Origin: Octopus sinensis | Taxonomy: Eukaryota | Reading direction: 5' to 3' | DNA length: 64,000 bases | Assembly: GCF_006345805.1 (NCBI RefSeq) | Contig: NC_043002.1 | Location: forward strand, 55,676,001-55,740,000 | Shown here: positions 3,676 through 61,707 of the stretch, piece by piece | How positions within the stretch are numbered: position 1 is the first letter of the stretch | How the letters are laid out: every line of letters begins with the position of its first letter | Notes under the pieces: generated by a model | What the model was told of the DNA's origin: nothing | The model's input: the letters and a program-made list of their open reading frames with translations, nothing else | Databases searched by the model: none | Made by a program: the position numbers and the translations under genes

Positions 3676-3714
<39 letters not shown>

Positions 3715-3717
<3 letters not shown>

Positions 3718-4110
3718 GATAAATCTCAGAGCAAGTTATAAACAGTAGCGGTAACACATCGTGACGCATATTTGCCATTTGAATATGGCTAACCCCTAAG
3801 GGTGGATGCTACTGTAGTTTGTAGCCCCAAGAAGATATCTCCTCCAGCTGGCTATAGACACACTATCTGTGTCCTCTCAGTATTTGTGAAGGAGAGTCAT
3901 CCTCCCCGTCTTCAACTCATGATACACACGGACCCGAGTTTCAAGGTGTTTACCTTTCATCAGCGTGTGACAATCATGGTTGTCGACGAGAAGTCAGCTC
4001 CCTTCACAAATACATATACTTTTTCCAGTGTCGATTGACACTGATATTGAAAAAGTGAAATCAAACAATGATAAATCTCAGAGCGAGTTATAAACAGTAG
4101 CGGTAACACA
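3715..4110 (-). mobile_element. Hammerhead-bearing ~352-bp monomer plus partial tandem repeat (retrozyme/PLE pLTR-like family 1)
   Basis: aatgataaatctcagagc.agttataaacagtagcggtaacacatcgtga occurs at 3715 and again at 4067. Contains a canonical hammerhead and is homologous to 10636-10985. Confidence 0.75.
3925..3969 (-). ncRNA. Type I hammerhead ribozyme, canonical core
   Basis: Minus strand reads CACACG CUGAUGA AAGG UAAACA CCUU GAAA CUCGG GUC^CGUGUG: 6-bp stem I, full core, 4-bp stem II, short self-complementary stem III, GUC cleavage triplet. Confidence 0.9.
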
Positions 4111-4119
4111 TCGTGAAGG

Positions 4120-5390
4120 GTCAAACAAGGACAAATAAACGGATAAACGGATTACATCGACCCCAGTGCGTAATTGGTACTTAATTTATCGACCCCGAAA
4201 GGATGAAAGGCAAAGTCGACCTCGGCGGATTTTGAACTCGGAACATAACGGCAGACAAAATACCGCTGAGCATTTTCCCAGCATGCTAGCCATTCTACCA
4301 ACTCGCCACCTTCTAATCCTTTCTACTGGAAGCACAAAGCCTCAGATTTATGGGATGGGGACTAGTCGATTATACCGACCCCAGTGTTTAACTGGTACTT
4401 ATCGACCCCGAAAGGATGAAAGGCAACGTCGACCACGGCGGAATTTGAACTCAGAACGTAGCAACGATCGAAATGCTTCTAAGCATTTCGTCCAGCGCGC
4501 TAACGATTCTGCTAGCTCGCCGCCTTATAATGTAATGTAAAGTAATATAATATGATATCTTGTAGAATATGTATATGTTTAAGTGCACTTTTGTATATTT
4601 GTGTATGTATGTCATTATTCAGTTTTATTTCAAGATTATTTGCCAATAGAAAAAGAACAGGACTCTAACCTAGATCCAAGGCTCAGTCATTGGAACTTCA
4701 ACATCAACAACAGGGTATTTTTGTTTGTATGTCTGTTTGTCTATCTGTCTATCTGTCTGTCTGTTTGTATGTATGTATGATGTATGTATGTATGTATGTA
4801 TGTATGTATGTATGTATGTATGTATGTATGTATGTATGTATAGGCCAGCATGTGAACAGGAAAAAAATTAAAGAAATAAAATTTTTAATAGAAATTGCCG
4901 AACAAATACATAAAACAGAACGATTTCCATCTTATTCTCTTGATACCATCTCCGAAGGAATACCTTTATGTCTTACACGAGGCTAAACATAGAGGGGACA
5001 AACAAAGACAGACAAAGGGATTACATCGATCCAAGTGCGTAGCTGGTACTTATTTAGTCGACCCCGAAAGGATGAAAAACAAAGTCGATCTCGGCGGAAT
5101 TTGAGCTCAGAACGTAACAGCAGACATAATACGGCTAAGCATTTCGCCTGCCGTGCTAAAGATTCTGCTAGCTCGCCGCCCTTAAAATAGAAAATAGTTA
5201 TTTCTTTATTGCCCTCAAGGGGCTAAATATAGAGGGGACAAACAAGGACAGACAAAGGGATTAAGTGGATTACATCGACCTCAGTGCATAACTGATACTT
5301 ATCTAATCGACCCCCAAAAGGATAAAAGGCAAAGTCGATCTCGGCGAAATTTGAACTCAGAAACGCAATGTTTCTGCCAACTCGCCGACC
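4120..5390 (-). mobile_element. Cluster of at least 4 tRNA-derived SINE copies (family B, central gtcgactttgcctttcatcctttcggggtcgataa)
   Basis: Repeated ~190-bp units with box-B-like gagttcaaattcc on the minus strand. The same family occurs at ~17590, 20070, 20380, 32448, 46280, 57243 and 58390. The central region resembles what I recall of the MetaSINE domain (not verified). Confidence 0.8.
4612..4720 (-). mobile_element. 3'UTR fragment of an RLE-type non-LTR element embedded in (TATG)n
   Basis: Minus strand ends aataaaactgaataatga|catacatac. A near-identical copy is at 7206-7315, and the same 3'UTR follows the RLE-type ORF end at ~21490-21700. Confidence 0.6.
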
Positions 5391-10603: not shown

Positions 10604-10635
10604 ACTATATATATATATATATAAGAAATTATATA

Positions 10636-11255
10636 AATCTCTGAACGAGAATAAACAGTAACCGCTCGACAACATAAGGTGTACTAGCCATCTGAATGTG
10701 GCTAGCCACTGGGGGTGGGGTGTTACTGATGCTTTTAGCCCCAGGCGATCAACGTCACCAGATGGACTTTAGACACAATCTCAGTGCTCTTGTGTTATTT
10801 GCAAAGGGAGGTCATCATCCCTCGAAACCTAAGTGCTATATACGGACTATAGTTTCAAGGTTAATTGCCTCCTCGTCCACGCATGGTAAACACCGGTTTT
10901 CGATGAAGGAGCCCCCTGCAAATAATATTAACGTTTTCACAGCAACCACTGTCACTGATTAGAAAAACTGTCTGAAAGCAATAATAATCTCTGAACGAGA
11001 TATAAACAGTAACCGCTCGACAACGTAAGGTGTACTAGCCATCTGAATGTGGCTAGCCACTGGGGTGGGGTGTTACTGATGCTTTGCAAAATAACACAAG
11101 GGCACTGAGATTGTGTCTAAAGTCCATCTGGTGACGTTGATCGCCTGGGGCTAAAAGCACCAGTAACACCCCACCCCCAGTGGATAGCCACATTCAGAGG
11201 CTAGTACACCTTACGTTGTCGAGCGGTTACTGTTTATATCTCGTTCAGAGATTTA
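10636..11255. mobile_element. Family 1 retrozyme-like element: 350-bp monomer, then a partial repeat, then an inverted copy
   Basis: aatctctgaacgag at 10636 and 10986. 11085-11255 is the reverse complement of the unit start. A degenerate hammerhead lies at 10840-10884(-). Confidence 0.75.
10840..10884 (-). ncRNA. Degenerate type I hammerhead (family 1)
   Basis: Minus strand reads AUGCG UGGACGA G GAGG CAAUUAA CCUU GAAA CUAUA GUC^CGUAU. The core is mutated at positions 3-4; stem III ACUAUAGU is a perfect palindrome. Confidence 0.6.
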
Positions 11256-11468
11256 TATTGCTTATATATTATATTATATATATATATATACACATACATA
11301 CATACACACACACATACAATATTATATATATATATTATATATTTATATATAATATATTTATATATATTATATATATATGTGTGTTGGTGTAGGCCCGGGT
11401 TGAGTGGGGTTAACCCAAGTAAATAAGGTATCAATACATAGCAGAGTAAATTATTATTATATAGAAGG

Positions 11469-25383: not shown

Positions 25384-26303
25384 GTGCCACTCTTGTCGAT
25401 ACAGATTTGTCCACGACTGAAAGATCAACGAAAAACGAAGTAGAGCCAGAAAAAACTAACTTGAGCCATTTGTGCCTGAAATATGAAGCTCGTTGCATGC
25501 CGGACGGAATTCGATCGTTTCTCCCCAAAAGCCCTATCATTAAGAAAGTTGATCAGCGCCTGTTGGTGGGACGCAGTAAGAATGCAGACGTTTTCCTCAA
25601 TGATCAATGCATGTCGAGGAATTACATTGAAATATGGGCGGCGAGCAACGACTCCCAAACATACTTTTTGAAGAACGTTAGCCAAAATAAATCTGTTCAA
25701 ATAGACGGCATTTCCCTTCGGTATGGAGAACTGGGAGTACTCAGAGATAAATGCGAATTAGTCCTCGACTACATTACTTTCGCTGTCAGCGTGAAACCAG
25801 GAGATGAAGATGGTGAGTATTATATACTGAGCACAGAGTGCTGTGATGACATCGGCAACAGACACGATATTTATACGATTCGGGGAGATTTACTCCCTAC
25901 TCAAGAGCTGTTCACCGGTTTCACGTTGATCCCAGGTTATCCAATCTCTTGTAAAAGTGGTATGTCATTTAAATTGGTAAACGGAAAGAACCCTATGTCT
26001 ACCAGCCAGAACGGTCAAATTCTTGGCCAATTCCCGTCCATTTCTCCGAAATCTTCATTCGTTCCAAACAACACGGTTAGCGTTGGCTCGTTGACTTCGC
26101 GAGTAGAGTCTAGTCAAGTTTACAACTTTACCACCCCGATTCTGTCTGCGTCGAGTCCAGAGGAACTTTATCATATTCGTCATCCTGAAGAACATTCTAT
26201 GTCTCAGGAAAAAGTTAGGCGTTTTCCTTCTGAAGGATTAGATATTCCAATGAACGAAGGCAAAGGACAAATTGATTATTACAAAAATACTGAACATTAT
26301 TAA
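25384..26303 (+). CDS. TIFA: TIFA-like FHA-domain adaptor protein, large coding exon (start codon lies in an unidentified upstream exon)
   Basis: Open ~306 codons after a strong acceptor (ttttctttttcttcccgttttag, AG 25382-83). FHA motifs VGRS, DQCMSRNY and LKNVSQNKSVQIDG..L.Y align by eye with human TIFA FGRN, DKQVSRVQ and IKNMSKKTNLIVDS..L.Y. A C-terminal PSEGLD fits the TRAF6 motif PxExx(acidic). Stop codon at 26301-03. Confidence 0.8.
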
Positions 26304-32447: not shown

Positions 32448-32843
32448 CCTTTTCTACTCTAGGCACAAGGCCCGACATTTTGGGGGAGGAGACCAGTTGA
32501 TTAGATCGACCACAGTATGCAGCTGGTACTTATTTAATCGACCCCGAAAGGATGAAAGGCAAAAACGACCTCGGCGGAATTTGAACTCAGAACGTAGCGG
32601 CAGGCGAAATACCTATTTTTTTACTACCCACAAGAGGCTAAACACAGAGAGAGGACAAACAAGGACAAACAAACGGATTAAGTCGATTATATCGACCCCA
32701 GTGCGTAACTGGTACTTAATTTATCGACCCCGAAAGGATGAAAGGCAAAGTCGACCTCGGCGGAATTTGAACTCAGAACGGCAGACGAAATACGGCTACG
32801 CATTTCGCCCGGCGTACAAACGTTTCTGCCAGCTCGCCGCCTT
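32448..32843 (-). mobile_element. Composite family B SINE insertion with a 15-bp target-site duplication
   Basis: taacgaaccaaatat at 32433-32447 and 32844-32858 brackets two fused SINE units. Confidence 0.85.
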
Positions 32844-33349
32844 TAACGAACCAAATATTTCAACAAACAATTAGTGTTGCTAATTAGTCATGAAACAGAG
32901 AGTTAGGTTCATTAGTTTGGCATTCAATGTGTTGAAAAGAAACTATAACTGTTTGCCAATGAACAAGTATGGTCTGTTACAATTTGAATGCCACAAAAAA
33001 TTTTATGTGTTCATGTTTAATCATTTTTTCGAAGAAAATGTTAGAGACTGTATTTATCTTTGTGAAAACATATTTAATTTTTGATTAGATTTTTTTTTCT
33101 TTTCTTTATGGTTTCTTTTTTGCGATGGTCTTGGAACGACTTTTGTTGTAAGAATGATACTTCAAACTTTTCATCCATCCTTCTATTTTTCTCCTCACCC
33201 CCCCCCCACCACCACCACCATTATTCCTAGAAAGTCGTGTGAGTAGAGTCCTCAAGCACCTCCTTCATAGGATCCTATCAGAAGCAACCATCGATTACAC
33301 TTTCCTGATGGGTTCCCATGTAAAACCAACTGAGACTGTAATTATTATC

Positions 33350-40288: not shown

Positions 40289-41584
40289 ATATATATATAA
40301 TATATATATATACACATACATACATACGTGTGTGTGTGTGTTATGCATATACATGTATAAGAAAACTATATTTAATGGAGACGCCAATGAATCCTAATAC
40401 AGACGGAAGGATATTAATTATTTACGCTGTCTCGCCAGATATGCCCCATCTTCTGTCTTCAACAACCTTGAAAATACATAACACGGGCAAATGTAATAAA
40501 AACGAACAGAGAGCAAAAGAGAGAGAGAGAGGCAGGGGGGGGAGAGAAAATGAAAGGCAGATAAATGTATGAGGGAGCGGTGCTTGTATGAGTTAGAGAA
40601 ATTGGGAGATAGAAAATATAAATAGCAAAAATAGGTGAACGAGAGAGAAAGGAGAGATTTAATCGGATTTCTGTAATCTCTATACGATGCTACAATGAAG
40701 CTAGATTTCTGGTAATCGCTGATGATGTTATTTACATTCAAATGCTTTCATTTTTTTTAATTTTTAATGTCTCTTTCAGTTCAAGGCGGCGAGCTGGCAG
40801 AAGCGTTAGCACGCCGGGCGAAATGCATTGCACCAAAAGTCTGGTATCACTGGTTGACATCATTAAGCTGCAGCCGGCATAACAGAATAGCAGCTTTTAT
40901 ATGCAGATTCAAAACGTTTCCCGCAAATAACTTGAAGGATATATATATATCTTCCACTCACACCTACTTCCTCCCACCCACCTCTCCCCTCTTGCTCCAA
41001 CCCCTACTTCTCTTCACTCCTACCATGCTTCTCTCTTCTCTTCACTCCTACCCACCTTCTCTCTTCCCCATCTCCCTTCATTGTCACCCTCCCCCGTAAC
41101 GCCATCCCTACACAATCCAACCCACCTTCCCTAGCCATCCCATCCCACCTCAACCCCATCCCTTGCACCCACTCCCACATACCCAACCTCTACCCCCCCA
41201 CCCTCAACCTAACCCACACGCCACCCTTGCTTTCCCCATTCTCACCTCCGCCACATCCCAACAACACCACACCATACACCACCCTACCACATAACACCAT
41301 ATCACATCACGCCACCACGCACACACTAGCACTGACCACTTCCCAGCCCCACATCCACAGACCTACACATGCACACATGCACACGTCCTGGTCACCAGCC
41401 CTCTTCCACACGTACATACATGCTCTCTTATATACACGCACGCGCACCTTCGTTTGGAGATCACCACTACTTTATTATCTCCTCTTCTTCCTAGATCTCC
41501 TGTGTGACCCCCTCTGTCCGGCATTCGCCATGATAGATCGCTAGCCACTACACATTCTTTATTTTTTCCTCTCCTTGTTTCTTG

Positions 41585-42135
41585 GATACACAAATGTATC
41601 CATATAACCTTCGAACAAGGGAGGTCGCGCTCCACACTACTTGATCGACAGCTTTATGATGGATACATTTTGTGTATCAAATAGCTAACTTAATGCGGAT
41701 GGCCCATGGAGCAATAAGCGGTACAGCTTATTCTTATTTTATATAAGAATGCCATATTAGTATGGCGATAACTATTAATTTCCAGGACGCTGCCATGTTC
41801 TCTTTTAGAGAGACTTAGTAATTTTAATATTTCTATTATTGAAAACAAGTGGATGTATTCCACGAAACTAGGTAATAAACCTTCGAACAGAGATAGTCGG
41901 AAGCGACACCTACTGGTCTGACTACGCTACATTGACAAGGGCAATACCCAGCGAACGCGTCTGTAGCTGTCGATCAATAGTTGGAGCGACTGACCTCCCT
42001 TGTTCGAAGGTTATATGGATACATTTTGTGTATCAAATAGCTAACTTAAGGCGATGGCCTCATGGAGCTAAAGCGTGACAGCTTTATCTTATTTTTATAA
42101 AATGAAGCCATATTAGTATGGCGATAACTATATTA
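41585..42135 (+). mobile_element. Family 3 retrozyme-like repeat: ~1.3 monomers (~356 bp) preceded by a short inverted piece
   Basis: Homologous to the 55121-56607 unit. ggatacattttgtgtatc at 41661 and 42017; ~41585-41655 is inverted relative to ~41960-42030. Confidence 0.8.
41926..41967 (+). ncRNA. U3:A8 hammerhead, degenerate at the GAAA strand
   Basis: GCTACA TTGACAA GGG CAATA CCC AGCGAA CGCG TC TGTAGC. Confidence 0.55.
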
Positions 42136-52184: not shown

Positions 52185-52316
52185 GCCCTTATAAGGAAAG
52201 ATATTGTTTGGGCTTCACTATAAGAGACTCTCTTGACTGGTTTATGAATGCGACATGTTGGGGGGAAAAACCTGCAGTCTTTTATCTATCTGAGTGTTTT
52301 AGAATTGGGGAAGTCA
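52185..52316 (+). CDS. MEIOB: MEIOB coding exon 3 (132 nt, phase 1-1)
   Basis: PYKERYCLGFTIRDSLDWFMNATCWGEKPAVFYLSECFRIGEV; compare human [49 protein letters not shown] boundaries. Confidence 0.95.
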
Positions 52317-54076
52317 GTAAGTATATATGGTCTTTATAGTCTTTCACACACCACACACACACACATACATATTATTTTATTCTTTTATTCTTTTACTTGT
52401 TTCAGTCATCAGATTGTGGCAATGCTGGGGCACCATCTTAAAGAATTTTAATCAAACAAATTGTCCCCAATACTAATTTTTTAAACAATCCTGGCACTTG
52501 TTCTATCAGCCTCTTTTCCCAAAATACTAAGTTAAGGGGACATAAACATGCCGACAGCAGTTGTCAAGCAGAGGTGGAGGACAAACGCAGACACAAAGAC
52601 ACACACACACACACACATATACATGTGTGTGTGTGTGTGTGTGTGTGAAGGTGCATGGCTTAGTGGTTAGGGCATTTGACTCATGATTGTAAGGTCATGA
52701 TTTCAATTCCCAGCAACGCAGTGTGTTCTTGAGCAAAACACTTTATTTCACATTGCTCCAATCCACTCAGCTAGCAGAAATGAGTAGTACCTGCATTTCA
52801 AAGGGCCAGCTGTGTCACACTCTGTGCCATGCTGAATCTCCCTGAGAACTACAATATGGCTACACGTGTCTGTGGAGTGCTCAGCCACTTGCACATTAAT
52901 TACATCAGCAAGCTGCTTCATTGATCATATCAGCTAGGGCCCTCATCGTCGTAACCAATGGAGTGCTCCTATGTGTGTGTGTGTGTGTGTGGTGTGTGTG
53001 TGTGTGTGTGTGTAATGGGTTCCTTCAATTTCCATCTACCAAATCCACTCACAAGGCTTTTGTTGACTCAAGGTTTTAGTAGAAGATACTTGCCTAAAGT
53101 ACCACAAAGTGAGACTGTCCAACCAGTGCCAGCATGGAAAGCTGACATTAAATGACGACGACGATGATGATGATAGTGGAGCGCTAAGAGTACCATACAA
53201 GTGTGATCATTGCCAGAGCAACAAGCTGGCCTCCGTACCAATGGCACGTAAAAAGTGTAATCGTTACCTGTGCCGCCTTACTAGCACTTGTGCTGGTGGC
53301 ACGTGAAAAAACATTCGAGCAAGGTTGATGCCAGTACCACTGGACTGGCTCCTGTGCAGGTGGCATGTAAAAAGAACCATTTAAGCATGGCCGCTGCCAG
53401 TACCACCTGACTGGCCCTCGTGCCAGTAGCACATAAAAGCACCCACTACACTCTCAGAGTGGTTGGCGTTAGGAAGGGCATCCAGCTGTAGAAACTCTGC
53501 CAGATCAAGATTGGAGTCTGGTGCAGCCATCTGGTTTGCCAGACCTCAATCAAATCATCCAACCCATGCTAGCATGGAAAGCAGACGTTAAATGATGATG
53601 ATGATGATATATATAGGTGCAGGAGTGGCTGTGTGGTAAGTAGCTTGCTTACCAACCACATGGTTCTGGGCTCAGTCCCACTGCGTGGCACCTTGGGCAA
53701 GTTTTCTTCTACTATAGCTTTGGGCTGACCAAAGCCTTGTGATCAGATTTGGTAGATGGAAACTGAAAGAAACCCATTGTATATATGTATATAAAAACAG
53801 ACATTAGCATGGAAAACAGACGTTAAACAATGATGATAATGATGATGATGATATATATGTATATGTGTGTCTGTGTTTGTCCCTGCGCAATTGCTTGACT
53901 ACCGATGCTGGTGTGTTTATGTCCTTGCAACTTAGCGGTTCAGCAAAAGAGTCCAATAGAATAAGTACTAGGCTTACAAAGAATAAGTCTTGGGGTTGAT
54001 TTGCTCAACAAAGGTGGTGCTCCAGCATGGCCGCAGTCAAATGACTGAAACAAGTAAAAGAATATATATATATATA

Positions 54077-55034
54077 TAAATGTAATATGTGACAATTATT
54101 CGTTAGCCATGATAAAACTCCAAGTTTCAGATGCTGAGGTGGAAATCCATGTCGCCATCTCTTCAGTTATCTAGCCATCAGAAAAATGCTATCCTTTCAA
54201 ATAATGGTCTTAAGCATGCAATGAACAAAATAAATGAATTCAATATAAATTCATCCTATTGTAAAATTGATGAAAACCTTAAATCAAAGAGTGGATTCAA
54301 AATACATATCTATATATATAAAACTGTAGTTGTGTGAGTGTCTGTCCCCTTCGATTTAGATTCCTAACTACTCCCACATTTTGCGATGCAGTTTAACCAA
54401 ATTCGGGTATCTTATAGTCGTGATTCATATCAAGCCCGTCTGGCTATTAGCACGCGTCTACGATGAGTCTACGATTTAAAAAATAATTTAACATCATTTT
54501 TTATTCCATTTTAATGCATAATTTTTCGTGTGTCGATGGCGGCAGAGTTGGCGTCCATGGTCACACCTGCACCTGTTTGCTTCTCCCCCCTTCTTCCCTC
54601 CCTCGTGAAGCTGTGGGGAAGGGAGTTAAGGGAATCAACATCGTAAAGCGTTGTCAAGGAGACCAGCGTTCTTTTAGAACAACGACTTCATGGCTTGAAG
54701 ACACCAAAACAGAAATGGCTAAGAAAGCCCGAATTGGCATCTGTAAGGGAAGTAACTCTCTAAAAATGCTTATATAGTTATTTCCCTTATAAACCCGAGC
54801 AACGCCGGGCGATACTGCTAGTTGTAAATAATTATATACGAAATATAATTCAATTAGCATATTAAAATTAAAATTTTCACGCTGCATTACATAAATATTT
54901 CACAACAGTATATACCCATAGTGCATTTTCCGATGGCCAGATAACTGAAGAGATAGCGGCGTGGATTTCCACCTCGGCATCCGAAACTCAGAGTTTTATC
55001 ATGGCTAACAAATAATTGTCACATATTACATTTA
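54077..55034. mobile_element. Foldback/MITE with ~110-bp terminal inverted repeats, interrupted by a Helitron
   Basis: taaatgtaatatgtgacaattatt..ttagccatgataaaactc.. at 54077 mirrors ..gagttttatcatggctaa..aataattgtcacatattacattta ending at 55034. Confidence 0.8.
54309..54821 (+). mobile_element. Non-autonomous Helitron
   Basis: A|TC start; cccgagcaacgccggg hairpin, then cgatactgCTAG|T end. Confidence 0.85.
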
Positions 55035-55287
55035 CAGATAAATTCCTCTATTTACATAATATTGAGGTCTCTTTCTTTCTTTTGTTGTATTACCATTTTT
55101 ATCAATATATATATATATATATTAGTTATCGCCATACTAATATGGCATTCTTATAAAAATAAGAATAAAGCTGACCACTTATTAGCTCCATGAGGCCATC
55201 GCCTTAAGTTAGCTATTTGATACACAAACTGTATCCATATAACCTTTGAACAAGGGAGGTCAGTCGCTCCACACTACTTGGCCGGCA

Positions 55288-55329
55288 GCTACAGACGCAT
55301 TTCGGGGTATTGCCCCTTTTCAATGCAGC
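55288..55329 (-). ncRNA. U3:A8 type I hammerhead (stem III C>U variant)
   Basis: Minus strand GCUGCA UUGAAAA GGGG CAAUA CCCC GAAA UGCG UC UGUAGC. Confidence 0.7.
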
Positions 55330-55649
55330 GTAGCCAAACCAGTAGGTGTCGCTTCCGACAATCTCTGTTCAAAGGTTTTATTTACCTAGCTTCGGTGGAA
55401 TACATCTACTTGTTTTCAATAATAGAAATATTAAAATAACTAAGTCTCTCTAAAAGAGAACAACGGCAGCGTTCCCGGAAAACATTAGTTATCGCCATAC
55501 TAATATGGCATTCTTATAAAAATAAGAATAAAGCTGACCACTTATTAGCTCCATGAGGCCATCGCCTAAGTTAGCTATTTGATACACAAACTGTATCCAT
55601 ATAACCTTTGAACAAGGGAGGTCAGTCGCTCCACACTACTTGGCCGGCA

Positions 55650-55691
55650 GCTACAGACGCGTTTCGGGGTATTGCCCCTTTTCAATGCAGC
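55650..55691 (-). ncRNA. U3:A8 type I hammerhead
   Basis: Minus strand GCUGCA UUGAAAA GGGG CAAUA CCCC GAAA CGCG UC UGUAGC. Confidence 0.8.
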
Positions 55692-55971
55692 GTAGCCAAA
55701 CCAGTAGGTGTCGCTTCCGACAATCTCTGTTCAAAGGTTTTATTTACCTAGCTTCGGTGGAATACATCCACTTGTTTTCAATAATAGAAATATTAAAATA
55801 ACTAAGTCTCTCTAAAAGAGAACAACGGCAGCGTTCCCGGAAAATATTTAGAGAGACTTAGTTATTTTAATATTTCTATTATTGAAAACAAGTGGATGTA
55901 TTCCACCGAAGCTAGGTAAATAAAACCTTTGAACAGAGATTGTCGGAAGCGACACCTACTGGTTTGGCTAC

Positions 55972-56013
55972 GCTGCATTGAAAAGGGGCAATACCCCGAA
56001 ACGCGTCTGTAGC
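55972..56013 (+). ncRNA. U3:A8 type I hammerhead, sense to MEIOB; predicted cut after 56007
   Basis: GCTGCA TTGAAAA GGGG CAATA CCCC GAAA CGCG TC^TGTAGC. Stem I extends through TTGGC/GCCAA and CTAC/GTAG. Confidence 0.8.
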
Positions 56014-56334
56014 TGCCGGCCAAGTAGTGTGGAGCGACTGACCTCCCTTGTTCAAAGGTTATATGGATACAGTTTGTGTATCAAATAGCTAACTTAAGGC
56101 GATGGCCTCATGGAGCTAATAAGTGGTCAGCTTTATTCTTATTTTTATAAGAATGCCATATTAGTATGGCGATAACTAATATTTTCCAGGAACGCTGCCG
56201 TTGTTCTCTTTTAGAGAGACTTAGTTATTTTAATATTTCTATTATTGAAAACAAGTGGATGTATTCCACCGAAGCTAGGTAAATAAAACCTTTGAACAGA
56301 GATTGTCAGAAGCGACACCTACTGGTTTGGCTAC

Positions 56335-56376
56335 GCTGCATTGAAAAGGGGCAATACCCCGAAACGCGTCTGTAGC
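56335..56376 (+). ncRNA. U3:A8 type I hammerhead, sense to MEIOB; predicted cut after 56370
   Basis: Identical motif 363 nt downstream of the previous copy. Confidence 0.8.
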
Positions 56377-56602
56377 TGCCGGCCAAGTAGTGTGGAGCGA
56401 CTGACCTCCCTTGTTCAAAGGTTATATGGATACAGTTTGTGTATCAAATAGCTAACTTAAGGCGATGGCCTCATGGAGCTAATAAGTGGTCAGCTTTATT
56501 CTTATTTTTATAAGAATGCCATATTAGTATGGCGATAACTAATATTTTCCGGGAACGCTGCCGTTGTTCTCTTTTAGAGAGACTTAGTTATTTTAATATT
56601 TC

Positions 56603-56644
<42 letters not shown>

Positions 56645-56708
56645 TTGACATATGTTACGTTTTAACTGTATTTAACCTATTCCTTTTGATTTAAATTTTT
56701 GTTTCTAG

Positions 56709-56778
56709 TTGAAATAAAAAATGCAATGGTTATGGCAGCCACATCATTTGATGAAAAGTTTAGACCATGGACCTCAAG
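56709..56778 (+). CDS. MEIOB: MEIOB coding exon 4 (70 nt, phase 1-2)
   Basis: ttttgtttctAG|IEIKNAMVMAATSFDEKFRPWTS|GTATAA; compare human [25 protein letters not shown]. Phases fit both neighbours. Confidence 0.88.
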
Positions 56779-56837
56779 GTATAAAAATAGCTTCCATCTT
56801 TCTCTTAACTTCTCCCTCAGTTCATAAAATTTACTAT

Positions 56838-56875
<38 letters not shown>

Positions 56876-56962
56876 ACACACACACACATGCAGTCACCTT
56901 TAACACAGCAAAAACAACAGCTAAAAGCCTTCTCTTCGGTGCCAGTTACTGATCCTCAACAG

Positions 56963-57216
56963 CAGCAGTTCCCAACCATTTTTTGCCTATGGATCCCTTT
57001 GATTTCTATTTTACTCAGGTGGACCCTCATAATCATTCATTGTTTAAAAATACCCTACTACATTTATAGCATTAAACATTATTTGGAATTGTATAAAAAA
57101 AAATTTTAACATTTTGTGTATTGTAGAAGTATAATCGAATTATTGCAGATAGATTTTAACAACAAAATCTTGTATGGACCCACAGGGGCTATATGGACTC
57201 TGGTTGAGAACAGCTG
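56963..57216. mobile_element. hAT (Charlie-type) MITE
   Basis: TIRs cagcagttcccaacc / ggttgagaacagctg; partial second copy at ~47930-48045. Confidence 0.7.
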
Positions 57217-57242: not shown

Positions 57243-57655
57243 AGGGCAGTGAGCTGGCAGAATTGTTAGCATGCCTGGTAAAATGCTTAGCAGTATTTCA
57301 TCTGCCATCACATTCTGAGTTCAAATTCTGCTGAGGTCGACTTTGCCTTTCATCCTTTCGAGGTCGATAAATTAAGTACCAGTTACGCACTGGGTCAATG
57401 TAATCGACTTGATCCATTTGTCTTTCCTTGTTTGTCCCCTCTGTATTTAACCCCTTGTGGGTAGTAAAGAGATAGGTATTTCATCTGCCATTACATTCTG
57501 AGTTCAAATTCTGCTATGGTTGACTTTGCCTTTCATCCTTTCAGGGTTGATTAAATAAGTACCAGTTACACATTGGGGTCGATGTCATTGACTTAATACC
57601 TTTGTCTGTCCTTGTTTGTCCCCTCTATATTTAGCCCCCGTATGGGCAATAAAGA
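57243..57655 (+). mobile_element. Head-to-tail dimer of family B SINE
   Basis: Two consecutive ctgagttcaaattctgct..gactttgcctttcatcctttc..aagtaccagttac units. Confidence 0.8.
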
Positions 57656-57687
57656 AATAAATATATGTGGTGGTGGTGGTGGTGGTT

Positions 57688-57698
57688 GATGATGATGG

Positions 57699-57793
<95 letters not shown>

Positions 57794-57848
57794 TTGATGA
57801 TGATGATTGATGATGATTGATGATGATGATGGTGATGGTGATGATGAT

Positions 57849-57892
<44 letters not shown>

Positions 57893-57916
57893 GATAATGA
57901 TGATGATGATGATGAT

Positions 57917-57966
<50 letters not shown>

Positions 57967-58052
57967 GTGATGATTGATGATGATGATGATGATGATTGAT
58001 GATGATGATGATGATGATGATTGATGATGATTGATATTGATGATGATGATGA
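57688..58052. repeat. ~365-bp (GAT)n microsatellite ending ~35 nt before MEIOB exon 5
   Basis: Directly visible. Confidence 0.95.
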
Positions 58053-58087
58053 TGGTTACAACAGAAATGTTTCCTATATTTCAACAG

Positions 58088-58277
58088 TCCTCTGAGTTTG
58101 AACATCAGTGATGCAGGTAACATAATCATATACACAGGGCCTGACAGAGAGCAATACCTTTGTTACAGTCACTTACCAACTAAAATTTACCGAGACTATT
58201 ACACTCTAGAAGACATCAACATCAATGGACAATCCCTACATGGTGAACATGTTAATTTACTGGTAGCAGTGAAGAAG
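58088..58277 (+). CDS. MEIOB: MEIOB coding exon 5 (190 nt, phase 2-0)
   Basis: ..SHLPTKIYRDYYTLEDININGQSLHGEHVNLLVAVKK; compare human [45 protein letters not shown] boundaries. Confidence 0.95.
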
Positions 58278-59962
58278 GTAAGAATATCTTATCTTGATTT
58301 ATTTCATTGTTGTCATTGTTTTAATGTCCACTTTTCCATGCCTGCATGAGTCAGAGATGGAATTCATCAGAACAGGACTGGATTCCCAAAAAGGCGGCAA
58401 GCTAGCAGGAAACATTAGCACACCAGGGGAAATGTTTAGTGGTATTTCATCTGTCTTTATGTTCTGAGTTCAAATTCTGCCGAGGTCGACTTTGCCTTTT
58501 ATCCTTTCAGGGTTGATAAATTAAGTACCAGTTGCATACTGGGTCGATCTAATTAACTGGCCCCACCTTTCCCCAAAATTTCAGGCCTTGTGCCTAGTGC
58601 AGAAAAGGACTGGATCCCATCTCTTCACCTGTTTCCAAAGAAAGTAATGTGTTTCCCCATGGCTGGACATATTTTCGTAGAAGACTGGATACAAATGATA
58701 CCTCTTGTATGACAGTGATACTCACTTACAGCCATCATGTAATGTCAGGACAAACACACACACACAAATATAAGATGGGCTCCTTTCAGTTTCCATTGAC
58801 CAAATTCACTCATAAGGCTTTGGCTGGCCAAGTACTGTAGCTGAAGATACCTGCCCAAGGTGCCATGTAGTAGGACTGAACCTAAAACCATGTAGTTAAA
58901 AAGCAAGCTACTTAACTACAACACATCCACACCTGCCCCTTTGAAATTTATAGTGATTTATTTGTATCCAACTTCCCATCCTAGGATGATGTTTGAAACT
59001 GTGCAAGACACAATGAAAGTAAGATAAGTGTGATTTGAAACCCCCAAAATGGTTTAATTTGTTAAGCTGCCTCCTTGTCAACAATCAGCATAACAACAAC
59101 TGTAAACTCCTGGTCATGTTTCTTTTATTATTGTACACTGCATAGGCATGGCTGCGTGGTAAGAAACTTGCTTCCCAACCACATGATTCCAGGTTCAGTC
59201 CCACTGCACCCCTTGGGTAAGTGATTTCTACTATAGTGAGAATTTACAAAAAAACAAAAGACGAAGACTGCTGTGTAAACAACAAACAGATGTATTAGTT
59301 TAACGTTCGGGAAGTGAGAAAGTCTTTTACATTTCAAACCTACGCTCTTCAACAGAAAAGAACACAGAAATGAACAAGGAGAGAAAATAAAAAAAGGTTT
59401 TGTGGCTAGTAATCTATCATGGCAAATGCCGGACAGAGGGGTCACACAGGAGAGCTAAGAAGAAGGGGAGATAATAAAGTAGTGGTGATCCCTAAATGAA
59501 GGTGTATGTGCATATGTAAGAGCATGTATGTGCATGTGGATAGGGTCTGGTAACCTTGACGTGTGCATGTGTAGGTGTGTGTGCACTGGTGTGGGTGCGG
59601 GAAGTGGTCAGTGTGAGTGTGTGTGGGGTGGTGTGTGGTGGTGCTGGGGTGTGGGGGAGGCGAGAGTGTTTGTGTCTGTGTGTGTGTGTTTGTGTTTCTC
59701 CCCCACCATTATTTGACAACAATGCTGGTGTGTTTATGTCACTGTAACTTAGCAGTTCGGCAAAAGAGACCGATAGAATAAGTACTAGGCTTACAAAGAA
59801 TAAGTCCTAGAGTTAATTTCTTTGACTAACACCCTTTAAGGTGGTGCTCCAGCATGGCCACAGTCAAATGACTGAAACAAATAAAAAGAAAAGGTTTTTA
59901 ATTTTTAAATAAAGTAATTTACCAAAATTATTTATTGTTCCTTAATGATTGTGTGTGTGCAC

Positions 59963-61030: not shown

Positions 61031-61174
61031 TCTGGCATCCTGATAATGACTGAAATAGGTAAAGGATAACAGACAGAAGTCTCTTAATGAATGAATGTGT
61101 GTGTGCACATGTGTGTAAGAGAGATTTTGTTTCAGTTTTTCTTAGTTTAATTGATTGTGTTTTTGTATTGCCAG

Positions 61175-61275
61175 GTAAATGAAGTAAGAAATATTAAAAC
61201 CAAAACAGGGAAACAAATGAAACAATGTGAAGTGAAACTGTTTGATGAGACTTGTTCCACATTTACATTAATGCT
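61175..61275 (+). CDS. MEIOB: MEIOB coding exon 6 (101 nt, phase 0-2)
   Basis: VNEVRNIKTKTGKQMKQCEVKLFDETCSTFTLM; compare human [41 protein letters not shown] boundaries. Confidence 0.95.
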
Positions 61276-61707
61276 GTAAGTTATTTTTGTATATTTTCAT
61301 TGCACTGGTATGAAACAACAGTCATGGCTGATGCCAGTGCCGTCTGACTGGTACCTGTGCCGGTGGCACATAAAAGCACCATTAGAGTTTGGGCCTCAAG
61401 GAAGCAGCAACAGGTGACCAAGACCTCTGGCAATATACCATGCTTGTGTAGACCTGTCAAGCCAAGTGAGACAGTAACTGTGGCCGATGTTAGTGTCAGG
61501 TCAATGACACCTGTACTGGTAGCACATAAAAAAAGCACCCACTACACACTCAGAGCAGTTGGCATTAGGAAGGGCATCCAGCTGTAGAAACCTTGCCAAA
61601 TCAGATCACAATCTAGTGCAGCCTCCCCCCACCACCACCACCATCCCCGGCTTACCAGTTTCCAGTCAAACAGTCCAACCCATGCCAGCATGGAAAGTGG
61701 ACCTTAA

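What the first reader, a model, noticed from the sequence alone, without database searches (positions are those of the whole stretch)
55972..56708. Sense self-cleaving ribozymes in MEIOB intron 3, preceded by their own antisense copies
Seen: two hammerheads lie on the MEIOB sense strand (predicted cuts after 56007 and 56370, the latter 338 nt before the exon 4 acceptor). The ~690 nt just upstream in the same pre-mRNA (55121-55813) is their near-perfect reverse complement. Inference: unmasked, they could cut the nascent meiotic pre-mRNA and release a 363-nt monomer from host transcription. The earlier-made antisense arm could instead trap them in a ~690-bp duplex, making the insertion tolerable. 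Such a duplex would also be a strong ADAR substrate (extensive A-to-I editing is established in coleoids) next to a 70-nt exon.
Basis: inference. Interest (0 to 1): 0.8.

Follow-up and report, generated by a model that had tools for sequence, protein, structure and literature searches.

The report
Palindromic hammerhead retrozyme insertion in MEIOB intron
A young, non-coding mobile element carrying variant hammerhead ribozyme motifs sits as a head-to-head palindrome in an intron of the octopus meiosis gene MEIOB; the "antisense mask" is real on paper, but it looks like the usual by-product of how these elements insert, not a special adaptation.

Summary
Positions 55119-55848 carry 2.0 units and 55847-56608 carry 2.1 units of a 363-nt repeat in opposite orientation. 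The arms are about 99% complementary. They lie in a 4,392-nt intron of a MEIOB-like gene on the + strand (Octopus sinensis), 100 nt before a 70-nt exon. Each sense unit carries a type I hammerhead-shaped motif, with predicted cuts after 56007 and 56370. The motif is non-canonical: U3-A8 replaces C3-G8, and helix III is a palindrome (ACGCGU) that can form only between two copies. Rfam does not detect it, but Rfam also misses a canonical-core hammerhead elsewhere in the window.

The window holds four such repeat loci from three families. All abut (TA)n, and three of the four are head-to-head inverted. That is the published insertion signature of Penelope-like elements, the proposed mobilisers of animal retrozymes. 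All six differences between the four units are private to one unit, so the palindrome arose at insertion.

Folding predicts a 697-bp duplex (-1327 kcal/mol) that buries both ribozymes. Head-to-head geometry puts the antisense arm first for transcription in either direction. Masking is therefore a plausible consequence, not evidence of selection. This is a new member of a known kind, of moderate to low interest.

The parts
52185..52316 (+). MEIOB-like coding exon upstream of the intron. It ends in phase 1 and is followed by a GTAAGT donor.
   Evidence: tblastn with a recalled human MEIOB gives aa 47-85 at E 2.8e-07. Pfam OB_MEIOB_N scores 9.1e-19.
52317..56708 (+). Host intron of 4,392 nt with GT...AG ends. 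The array fills 1,490 nt of it.
55105..55122 (.). Left flanking (AT)n microsatellite, abutting the 3' end of the antisense arm.
   Evidence: sequence read
55119..55848 (-). Antisense arm: 2.0 units of the 363-nt element, sense on the minus strand. Its 3' end faces outward at (TA)n and its 5' end lies at the centre.
55288..55329 (-). Hammerhead motif of the outer left unit. It carries a private CpG>TpG change (C15.2 to U).
55650..55691 (-). Hammerhead motif of the inner left unit, identical to the sense copies.
55817..55846 (.). 30-nt unpaired centre. It is the 5' extension of the left arm (unit positions about 332-363). The junction shares a 2-nt microhomology (TT at 55847-55848).
55847..56608 (+). 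Sense arm: 2.1 units on the MEIOB sense strand. Its 3' end faces outward at (TA)n.
55972..56013 (+). Hammerhead motif 1: GCUGCA|UUGAAAA|GGGG-CAAUA-CCCC|GAA|ACGCGU|C^|UGUAGC. The predicted cut is after 56007.
56335..56376 (+). Hammerhead motif 2, same sequence. The predicted cut is after 56370.
56008..56370 (+). Predicted 363-nt monomer between the two cut sites. It folds into a stable branched rod with its ends paired.
   Evidence: MFE -121.1 kcal/mol, z-score -6.12 against 100 shuffles
56606..56643 (.). Right flanking (TA)19 microsatellite.
56644..56708 (+). Candidate branch-point region (my reading of the sequence, not tested) and polypyrimidine tract with the AG acceptor. All lie outside the duplex.
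56709..56778 (+). 70-nt MEIOB-like exon, phase 1 at its start (…VIEIKNAMVMAATSFDEKFRPWTS…).
41582..42134 (+). Older locus of the same family, about 90% identical. A 72-nt inverted piece (41582-41653) sits head-to-head with about 1.3 sense units. The sense part ends at the same unit position (GGCGATAACTAT) in (TA)n. Its hammerhead at 41926-41967 keeps U3...A8 but has a decayed 3' box.

Best explanation
The array is one recent insertion of a 363-nt non-coding, hammerhead-bearing element of the animal 'non-LTR retrozyme' kind. It landed in an intronic (TA)n microsatellite of Octopus sinensis MEIOB.

Inferred mechanism:
- Reverse transcription of a homogeneous, probably circular or multimeric, RNA template was primed from both sides of the cut (TA)n target.
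- This gave two tandem cDNA runs whose 3' ends face outward and whose 5' ends meet in the middle.
- That is the tandem-plus-inverted structure typical of Penelope-like element integration.

The palindrome is therefore a by-product of insertion, not a later adaptation.

When MEIOB is transcribed, the antisense arm comes out first. The sense arm should then zip onto it from the 30-nt centre outward, giving a duplex of about 697 bp. That duplex buries both ribozyme motifs.

These motifs are weak on their own. They have a U3-A8 core and a helix III that needs two copies to pair. Cleavage of the pre-mRNA is therefore unlikely.

The element is probably near-neutral. The splice signals lie outside the duplex.

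What is shown:
- the architecture
- the motif
- the recurrence at other loci
- the star-like pattern of mutations
- the folding energies

What is inferred:
- the priming mechanism
- the Penelope-like partner
- catalysis
- the duplex in vivo
- editing
For: 1. Architecture and flanks.
2. Each unit has a hammerhead-shaped motif. Helix I is 6 bp. Helix II is 4 bp with G10.1-C11.1. The core boxes are UUGAAAA and GAA, followed by A15.1, U16.1 and C17. Five motifs are found against 0.037 expected by chance.
3. The helix III box is a palindrome in all three families in the window (ACGCGU, ACUCGGGU, ACUAUAGU). My descriptor did not require this. Two copies cofold into a double hammerhead at -40.7 kcal/mol against 2 x -17.3.
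4. The U3-A8 covariation is reported for hammerheads of Schistosoma Penelope-like elements (PMC4209133). The 10%-diverged older copy also has U3...A8 and differs in that box only at the free position N7. Its helix I has A-U where the young copy has G.U.
5. Retrozyme traits are present. The units are 363 nt and 40.5% GC. There is no coding capacity and no protein homologue. The monomer fold has z = -6.1 with paired ends. Mussel retrozymes are 350-390 bp (PMC7229834).
6. The insertion signature matches Penelope-like elements. Four loci in the window abut (TA)n, and three are head-to-head inverted. PMC8557442 describes partial tandems plus an adjacent inverted 5'-truncated copy and a microsatellite/(TA)n bias.
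7. All 6 differences among the four units are private to one unit, and 3 of the 5 substitutions are CpG transitions.
8. The hairpin folds at -1327 kcal/mol against -491.5 for the two arms folded separately. The ribozymes are fully paired to the antisense arm.
Against: - No Rfam hammerhead hit, even at E<=10. The same kind of search also missed the canonical-core motif at 3925-3969, so this negative carries little weight.
- No other family copies could be retrieved. Covariation support therefore rests on one decayed copy.
- No Penelope-like reverse transcriptase ORF is in the window, so the mobiliser is inferred from the literature.
- No RNA data exist, so catalysis, circular RNA, the duplex in vivo and editing are all untested.
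- The 30-nt centre is element sequence, not the foreign 30-40 bp 'tail' described for Penelope-like elements.
Confidence: 0.75

Rival explanations
1. Sense hammerheads in a meiotic pre-mRNA are harmful, and this insertion persists because the upstream antisense arm traps them. On this view the arm is what makes the allele tolerable.
For: The duplex buries both motifs in the minimum-energy fold at every transcript length tested. Xenopus retrozymes are depleted in introns relative to intergenic DNA (preprint 10.64898/2026.07.22.740005).
Against: The inverted arm arose with the insertion, because all differences between units are private. The same architecture is seen at loci outside this intron. 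It is also the default for Penelope-like insertions. The hammerhead is a dimer-dependent U3-A8 variant, probably slow. About 43% of Xenopus retrozymes sit in introns. The older locus at 41582-42134 carries sense units with only a 72-nt inverted piece that does not cover the hammerhead. It persisted long enough to diverge 10%, although whether it is transcribed is unknown.
Confidence: 0.12
2. The motif is only a relic. The 363-nt repeat is a satellite or retrozyme-derived repeat whose hammerhead no longer cleaves, so there is nothing to mask.
For: C3 and G8 are both replaced, helix III cannot form in a monomer, and there is no Rfam hit. PMC4209133 reports low in vitro activity for minimal hammerheads of Penelope-like elements.
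Against: U3-A8 is an isosteric covariation and is retained in a copy 10% diverged. All other core positions, G10.1-C11.1 and the palindromic helix III are intact in all four young copies or pairable through G.U. The family was mobile recently, since the units differ by only 0.4%.
Confidence: 0.25
3. A tandem dimer inserted first. A later DNA-level fold-back (replication template switch at the small TCTC-N-GAGA hairpin near the unit junction) then created the inverted arm.
For: The junction lies next to a short palindrome (ctctctaaaagagaa, 55808-55822) and has a 2-nt microhomology.
Against: No variant is shared by mirrored units (0 shared against 6 private), so any duplication must have followed insertion almost at once. 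Three independent loci show the same head-to-head form.
Confidence: 0.08
4. Assembly artefact: a chimeric fold-back long read produced a false palindrome.
For: Near-perfect palindromes are a known artefact class of long-read libraries (own knowledge). PMC8557442 notes that such structures trouble assemblies.
Against: The arms are unequal (730 vs 762 nt) with different outer ends. Both ends stop exactly at element/(TA)n boundaries, with distinct unique flanks. The six mirror differences include CpG transitions. Diverged loci with the same form (84% and 97% arm complementarity) cannot be artefacts.
Confidence: 0.04
5. The palindrome works as a hairpin-RNA locus. Transcribed within MEIOB in the germline, its dsRNA is diced into small RNAs that silence the retrozyme family.
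For: A perfect duplex of about 697 bp is predicted inside a germline-expressed gene. Such hairpin-RNA loci are known in Drosophila (own knowledge).
Against: There are no small-RNA data and no sign of conservation. The insertion is very young, so there is no evidence of selection.
Confidence: 0.07

Closest known systems
Metazoan non-LTR retrozymes (Cervera & de la Pena 2020, PMC7229834)
   Same: Short tandem repeats of 150-450 bp with low GC and no coding capacity. Each unit has a type I hammerhead, and the monomer RNA is highly structured. Mussel units are 350-390 bp.
   Different: The array here is a head-to-head palindrome, not a simple tandem. The hammerhead core is U3-A8. Circular RNA expression is not shown. 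I found no cephalopod retrozymes in the searchable literature.
Penelope-like element insertion structures (Craig et al. 2021, PMC8557442)
   Same: Partial tandems with an adjacent inverted 5'-truncated copy. There is a bias toward microsatellite targets, (TA)n for Naiads. Target-site duplications cannot be discerned.
   Different: No reverse transcriptase or GIY-YIG ORF is present, so the element is non-autonomous. The 30-nt centre is element sequence, not a foreign tail. In that paper the (TA)n bias is stated for Naiads, which lack canonical hammerheads.
Minimal hammerheads of Penelope-like elements with U3-A8 covariation (Cervera & de la Pena 2014, PMC4209133)
   Same: U3-A8 in place of C3-G8, a G10.1-C11.1 pair, palindromic 15.2-16.2/loop 3, expected action as a dimer, and copies found on opposite strands 100-700 bp apart.
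   Different: [quoted passage not shown]
Amphibian satellite 2 / axolotl HHR_Amex1 hammerheads
   Same: Helix III is a single base pair capped by a palindromic tetraloop. The motif is weak as a monomer and efficient as a dimer of tandem units of about 330-350 nt (PMC7229834).
   Different: The amphibian motifs have a canonical C3-G8 core. The conserved loop 1/loop 2 contacts were not assessed here.
L1 twin priming (own knowledge)
   Same: Two cDNAs primed from both target strands give inverted 5'-truncated copies joined with microhomology.
   Different: A different retroelement class. Here both arms are multimeric, which suggests rolling-circle or multimeric templates.
Intronic hammerheads conserved in amniotes (de la Pena & Garcia-Robles 2010, cited in PMC7229834)
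   Same: A sense hammerhead inside an intron of a protein-coding gene.
   Different: Those are single, ultraconserved, canonical motifs with a stable helix III. This is a young repeat copy with no evidence of conservation.

Membership tests
Hammerhead ribozyme, type I | Conserved core nucleotides U4 G5 A6 A9 / G12 A13 A14 / A15.1-U16.1 / H17 in the right order around three helices | tested here: met
   UUGAAAA ... GAA A ... U C at 55978-56007 and 56341-56370
Hammerhead ribozyme, type I | C3-G8 pair in the core | tested here: inconclusive
   It is replaced by U3-A8, an isosteric covariation reported in natural hammerheads of Penelope-like elements (PMC4209133). The older copy has the same pair. 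Activity is unknown.
Hammerhead ribozyme, type I | Helices I and II flanking the core, with G10.1-C11.1 | tested here: met
   Helix I is GCUGCA/UGUAGC (6 bp, one G.U) and helix II is GGGG/CCCC. Both appear in unconstrained minimum-energy folds.
Hammerhead ribozyme, type I | Helix III | tested here: inconclusive
   In a monomer only A15.1-U16.1 closing CGCG can form. The ACGCGU palindrome gives 6 bp between two copies. This is the known dimeric type.
Hammerhead ribozyme, type I | Score at or above the Rfam gathering threshold | tested here: not met
   No hit even at E<=10. The control canonical motif at 3925-3969 was also missed.
Hammerhead ribozyme, type I | Compensatory changes in helices across homologues | tested here: inconclusive
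   Only one diverged copy is available. It shows G.U to A-U in helix I and variation at N7. No further copies were retrievable.
Hammerhead ribozyme, type I | Site-specific self-cleavage | not testable with these tools
   Needs in vitro transcription or RNA end mapping.
Non-LTR retrozyme | Tandem units of 150-450 bp, each with a type I hammerhead, low GC, non-coding | tested here: met
   363-nt units at 40.5% GC. The longest stop-free frame is 72 aa and has no homologue.
Non-LTR retrozyme | Unit-length RNA with a stable rod-like or branched fold | tested here: met
   -121.1 kcal/mol, z = -6.12
Non-LTR retrozyme | Expression as linear and circular unit-length RNA | not testable with these tools
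   No octopus RNA data are available here.
Penelope-like element (autonomous) | ORF with reverse transcriptase and GIY-YIG endonuclease | tested here: not met
   No such ORF lies in or near the array. The array is not itself a Penelope-like element.
Penelope-like-type insertion | Partial tandem plus adjacent inverted 5'-truncated copy, with a microsatellite target | tested here: met
   The pattern recurs at 41582-42134 and 10633-11263.
Penelope-like-type insertion | 30-40 bp tail at one end | tested here: inconclusive
   The 30-nt centre and the 63-nt right-hand extension are both element sequence.
MEIOB | N-terminal OB domain of MEIOB | tested here: met
   Pfam PF24903 at 9.1e-19, 67.6 bits against a cut-off of 27. 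The exon hits are collinear.

The most novel reading that the evidence does not exclude
Head-to-head twin insertion may be a built-in self-neutralising geometry for ribozyme-bearing retroelements. The 5' ends meet in the middle, so any read-through transcript, from either strand, makes the antisense arm first and the sense ribozymes second. Host pre-mRNAs would then be protected from cleavage, and a long dsRNA would form that could feed ADAR editing or small-RNA silencing of the family. If sense intronic copies without a twin arm are depleted genome-wide while twinned ones are not, this would be a general rule linking insertion mechanism to host tolerance. It would also be independent structural evidence that Penelope-like elements mobilise animal retrozymes.
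Probability: 0.15. Interest if true: 0.6.

Novelty: new member of a known kind. Interest (0 to 1): 0.33.

Why it matters
The specific locus is most likely an ordinary young transposon insertion. Two points have some value.

First, retrozyme-like repeats in an octopus show the insertion hallmarks of Penelope-like elements: a (TA)n target and head-to-head inverted, 5'-truncated tandems. [quoted passage not shown] It also extends the natural U3-A8 hammerhead variant to cephalopods.

Second, a near-perfect 1.49-kb palindrome inside a germline-expressed gene is a clean natural test case. It can be used to study competition between dsRNA formation and ribozyme folding, hyper-editing in a coleoid, and palindrome stability at the DNA level.

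Tried and rejected
- **Rfam.** I searched the whole window at gathering score, then 54900-56800 and 55940-56040 at E<=10. There was no hammerhead hit. The strong miRNA 'hits' at 55716-55946 only reflect the long hairpin and all fall below gathering score.
- **Alternative register.** I considered helix I as GCUACG/UGUAGC with a 12-nt 5' core (CUGCAUUGAAAA). I rejected it. It does not give a hammerhead core, and the unconstrained fold chooses GCUGCA/UGUAGC.
- **More family copies.** I searched the big protein collection with the longest stop-free frame of the unit and found no candidate. An exact 23-mer scan of metagenome contigs gave 0 hits. A comparative test beyond the window was therefore not possible.
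- **Upstream MEIOB exons.** A short-word tblastn search for exons that would check the label 'intron 3' gave nothing convincing. The numbering is left unverified.
- **Monomeric helix III.** A 2-bp stem with a 2-nt loop is sterically disallowed.
- **Other ribozyme classes.** None was found on the antisense arm.

Full report
**1. What is in the sequence**

Reading 54900-57000 and the repeat tools show two adjacent tandem arrays of one element in opposite orientation.
- 55121-55848 has period 362, 2.0 copies and 98% matches.
- 55847-56608 has period 363, 2.1 copies and 99% matches.

The arms are 99-100% complementary. For example, 55567-55816 against 55847-56096 is 100% over 250 nt with 30 nt between them.

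Aligning the reverse-complemented left arm to the right arm gives 1 indel and 5 substitutions over about 698 nt.

The left arm is 730 nt and the right arm is 762 nt.
- In sense orientation the left arm starts 30-32 nt further 5' than the right arm. That stretch is the unpaired centre, 55817-55846.
- The right arm runs 63 nt further 3'.

Both outer ends run straight into (TA)n: about 55105-55122 on the left and 56606-56643 on the right.

**2. Host gene and organism**

A recalled human MEIOB sequence, used only as a probe, gives collinear + strand tblastn hits at 52196-52312, 58170-58280 and 61172-61336.

Exon 52185-52316 ends in phase 1 before GTAAGT. The 70-nt exon 56709-56778 follows a ...tttctag acceptor and restores the frame (…RIGEV-I-EIKNAMVMAATSFDEKFRPWTS…).

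The joined peptide matches Pfam OB_MEIOB_N at 9.1e-19, above the curated cut-off. It also matches a named MEIOB protein at 1.4e-26.

The intron is 52317-56708, 4,392 nt. The array fills 1,490 nt of it and ends 100 nt before the acceptor, so the polypyrimidine tract and a candidate branch-point region lie outside the duplex.

An upstream ORF at 25407-26300 is 100% identical to an Octopus sinensis protein, LOC118763929, an FHA-domain protein.

I could not find the N-terminal MEIOB exons. The labels 'intron 3' and 'exon 4' are unverified.

**3. The ribozyme claim**

Rfam gives no hammerhead at gathering score or at E<=10, even on a 101-nt slice.

By hand, and with my own descriptor, each unit contains this motif:

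GCUGCA | UUGAAAA | GGGG-CAAUA-CCCC | GAA | A-CGCG-U | C^ | UGUAGC

On the + strand it lies at 55972-56013 and 56335-56376, with C17 at 56007 and 56370.

The descriptor allowed C3-G8 or U3-A8. It found 5 motifs in the window against 0.037 expected per random 64-kb sequence.

The core differs from the canon at two positions that pair with each other: U3-A8 instead of C3-G8. This covariation is reported for natural hammerheads of Schistosoma Penelope-like elements, with about 1,300 hits (PMC4209133).

Helix III cannot form in a monomer beyond the A15.1-U16.1 pair closing CGCG. The box ACGCGU is a palindrome, and two copies cofold into a double hammerhead with a 6-bp helix III at -40.7 kcal/mol against 2 x -17.3.

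This is the dimer-dependent design described for amphibian satellite hammerheads and for hammerheads of Penelope-like elements (PMC7229834; PMC4209133).

Unconstrained folding recovers helices I and II. It also extends helix I into a long stem that joins the two ends of the 363-nt monomer. That monomer folds at -121.1 kcal/mol with z = -6.1.

The fifth descriptor hit is a canonical-core hammerhead on the minus strand at 3925-3969:

CACACG CUGAUGA AAGGU-AAAC-ACCUU GAA ACUCGGGU C CGUGUG

Rfam also fails to report it at E<=10, so the Rfam negative says little.

My conclusion is that the motif is a credible hammerhead of the retroelement type, non-canonical and probably slow. Catalysis is untested.

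**4. Other loci in the same window**

BLAST of the unit against the window finds an older copy at 41582-42134, about 90% identical.
- It has a 72-nt inverted piece (41582-41653) head-to-head with about 1.3 sense units.
- The sense part ends at the same unit position as the left arm of the young array (GGCGATAACTAT) in (TA)n.
- Its hammerhead keeps U3...A8.
- It differs in the 5' box only at the free position N7.
- It has A-U where the young helix I has G.U.
- Its 3' box is decayed.

The canonical hammerhead at 3925-3969 belongs to a second family. It has a 351-nt unit and 1.15 copies on the minus strand at 4113-3712, ending in (TA)n.

A third family is 68-71% identical to the second. It lies at 10633-11263, with about 1.27 units on the minus strand plus a 175-nt inverted piece on the + strand. 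The arrangement is again head-to-head, with (TA)n on both sides.

All three families have palindromic helix III boxes: ACGCGU, ACUCGGGU and ACUAUAGU.

In total the window holds four loci. All are at (TA)n, and three are head-to-head.

**5. What this architecture is**

PMC8557442 describes insertions of Penelope-like elements as follows:
- partial tandems;
- a bias to microsatellites, (TA)n for Naiads;
- target-site duplications that cannot be discerned.

The array fits these descriptions. The ribozyme polarity defines the sense strand. Both arms have their 3' ends outward at (TA)n, and their 5' ends meet at the centre with a 2-nt microhomology.

The outer termini all lie in A/U-rich stretches that merge into (TA)n. 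This suggests microhomology priming on a circular or multimeric template (inference).

All six differences among the four units are private to one unit, and three of the five substitutions are CpG transitions.
- The units were therefore identical when the palindrome formed.
- The inverted arm arose at, or essentially at, insertion.
- The differences look like real mutations, not assembler noise.
- Divergence from the consensus is about 0.4%, so the insertion is young.

**6. Consequences for the transcript**

Folding 55119-56608 gives a hairpin of -1327.3 kcal/mol with 697 pairs across the centre. The two arms folded separately give -491.5 kcal/mol.

Both hammerheads are paired to the antisense arm, 42/42 and 41/42 nt. 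This is already true in a transcript that ends at 56013.

Kinetically (inference), the sense arm emerges next to its partner at the 30-nt loop, so zippering has minimal contact order. The ribozyme needs two copies 363 nt apart to be free at once.

It follows from geometry, though. With head-to-head arms, the antisense arm is transcribed first whichever strand is read.

It does not show that the arm was selected. The preprint reports about 43% of Xenopus retrozymes in introns, although depleted relative to intergenic DNA.

From established knowledge, not tested here:
- Long perfect dsRNA is a strong ADAR substrate, and coleoids edit heavily.
- Long palindromes with short spacers are fragile DNA.

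**7. Verdict**

The best reading is a recent Penelope-like-type twin insertion of a hammerhead retrozyme into an intronic (TA)n. The masking is an automatic side effect.

This is a new member of a known kind. The more novel reading, that twin insertion is a general self-neutralising geometry, is not excluded. It needs a genome-wide census and RNA data.

Noticed in passing
window 3712-4113 (minus strand); hammerhead at 3925-3969: A second retrozyme-like family. The unit is 351 nt, with 1.15 tandem copies ending in (TA)n. It carries a canonical-core type I hammerhead (CUGAUGA ... GAAAC-UCGG-GUC, cut after 3931). Rfam does not report it at E<=10.
   Followed up: partly
window 10633-11263: A third family, 68-71% identical to the second. 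About 1.27 units on the minus strand plus a 175-nt inverted piece (11089-11263) lie head-to-head, with (TA)n on both sides. The hammerhead at 10839-10885 has a decayed 5' box but a perfect palindromic helix III (ACUAUAGU). Relative to the second family it shows one C-G to U-A double change in helix I.
   Followed up: partly
window 41582-42134: An older copy of the finding's family, about 90% identical. A 72-nt inverted head-to-head piece is present, and the 3' end in (TA)n is at the same unit position. It is not known whether it lies inside MEIOB or upstream of it.
   Followed up: partly
window 25407-26303 (+): A 298-aa ORF 100% identical to Octopus sinensis LOC118763929 and 81% to an Argonauta hians protein, with a weak FHA domain. 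It is a separate gene upstream of MEIOB and identifies the organism.
   Followed up: yes
window 55716-55946, both strands: Rfam plant and animal miRNA-precursor models score up to 99 bits here (E 4e-22), all below gathering score. These are artefacts of the long perfect hairpin, not miRNA genes.
   Followed up: yes
window 54068-54185 and 54926-55043: Another inverted repeat (118 nt, 89% complementary, 740 nt apart) in the same MEIOB intron, upstream of the array. It is probably two copies of another interspersed repeat.
   Followed up: no
window 57293-57638 and 57687-58054: Two direct copies spaced about 183 nt apart (86-89% identical) are followed by a (TGA)~120 microsatellite. Both lie in the intron after the 70-nt exon. 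An (AC)25 run lies at 56839-56888.
   Followed up: no
window 4166-4540, 32497-32874 and other places: A frequent interspersed repeat whose translation reads ...RPRKDERQ(S/R)RPRRNLNSER..., often in pairs. It looks like a SINE-type element. One copy directly abuts the 5' side of the second-family retrozyme.
   Followed up: no
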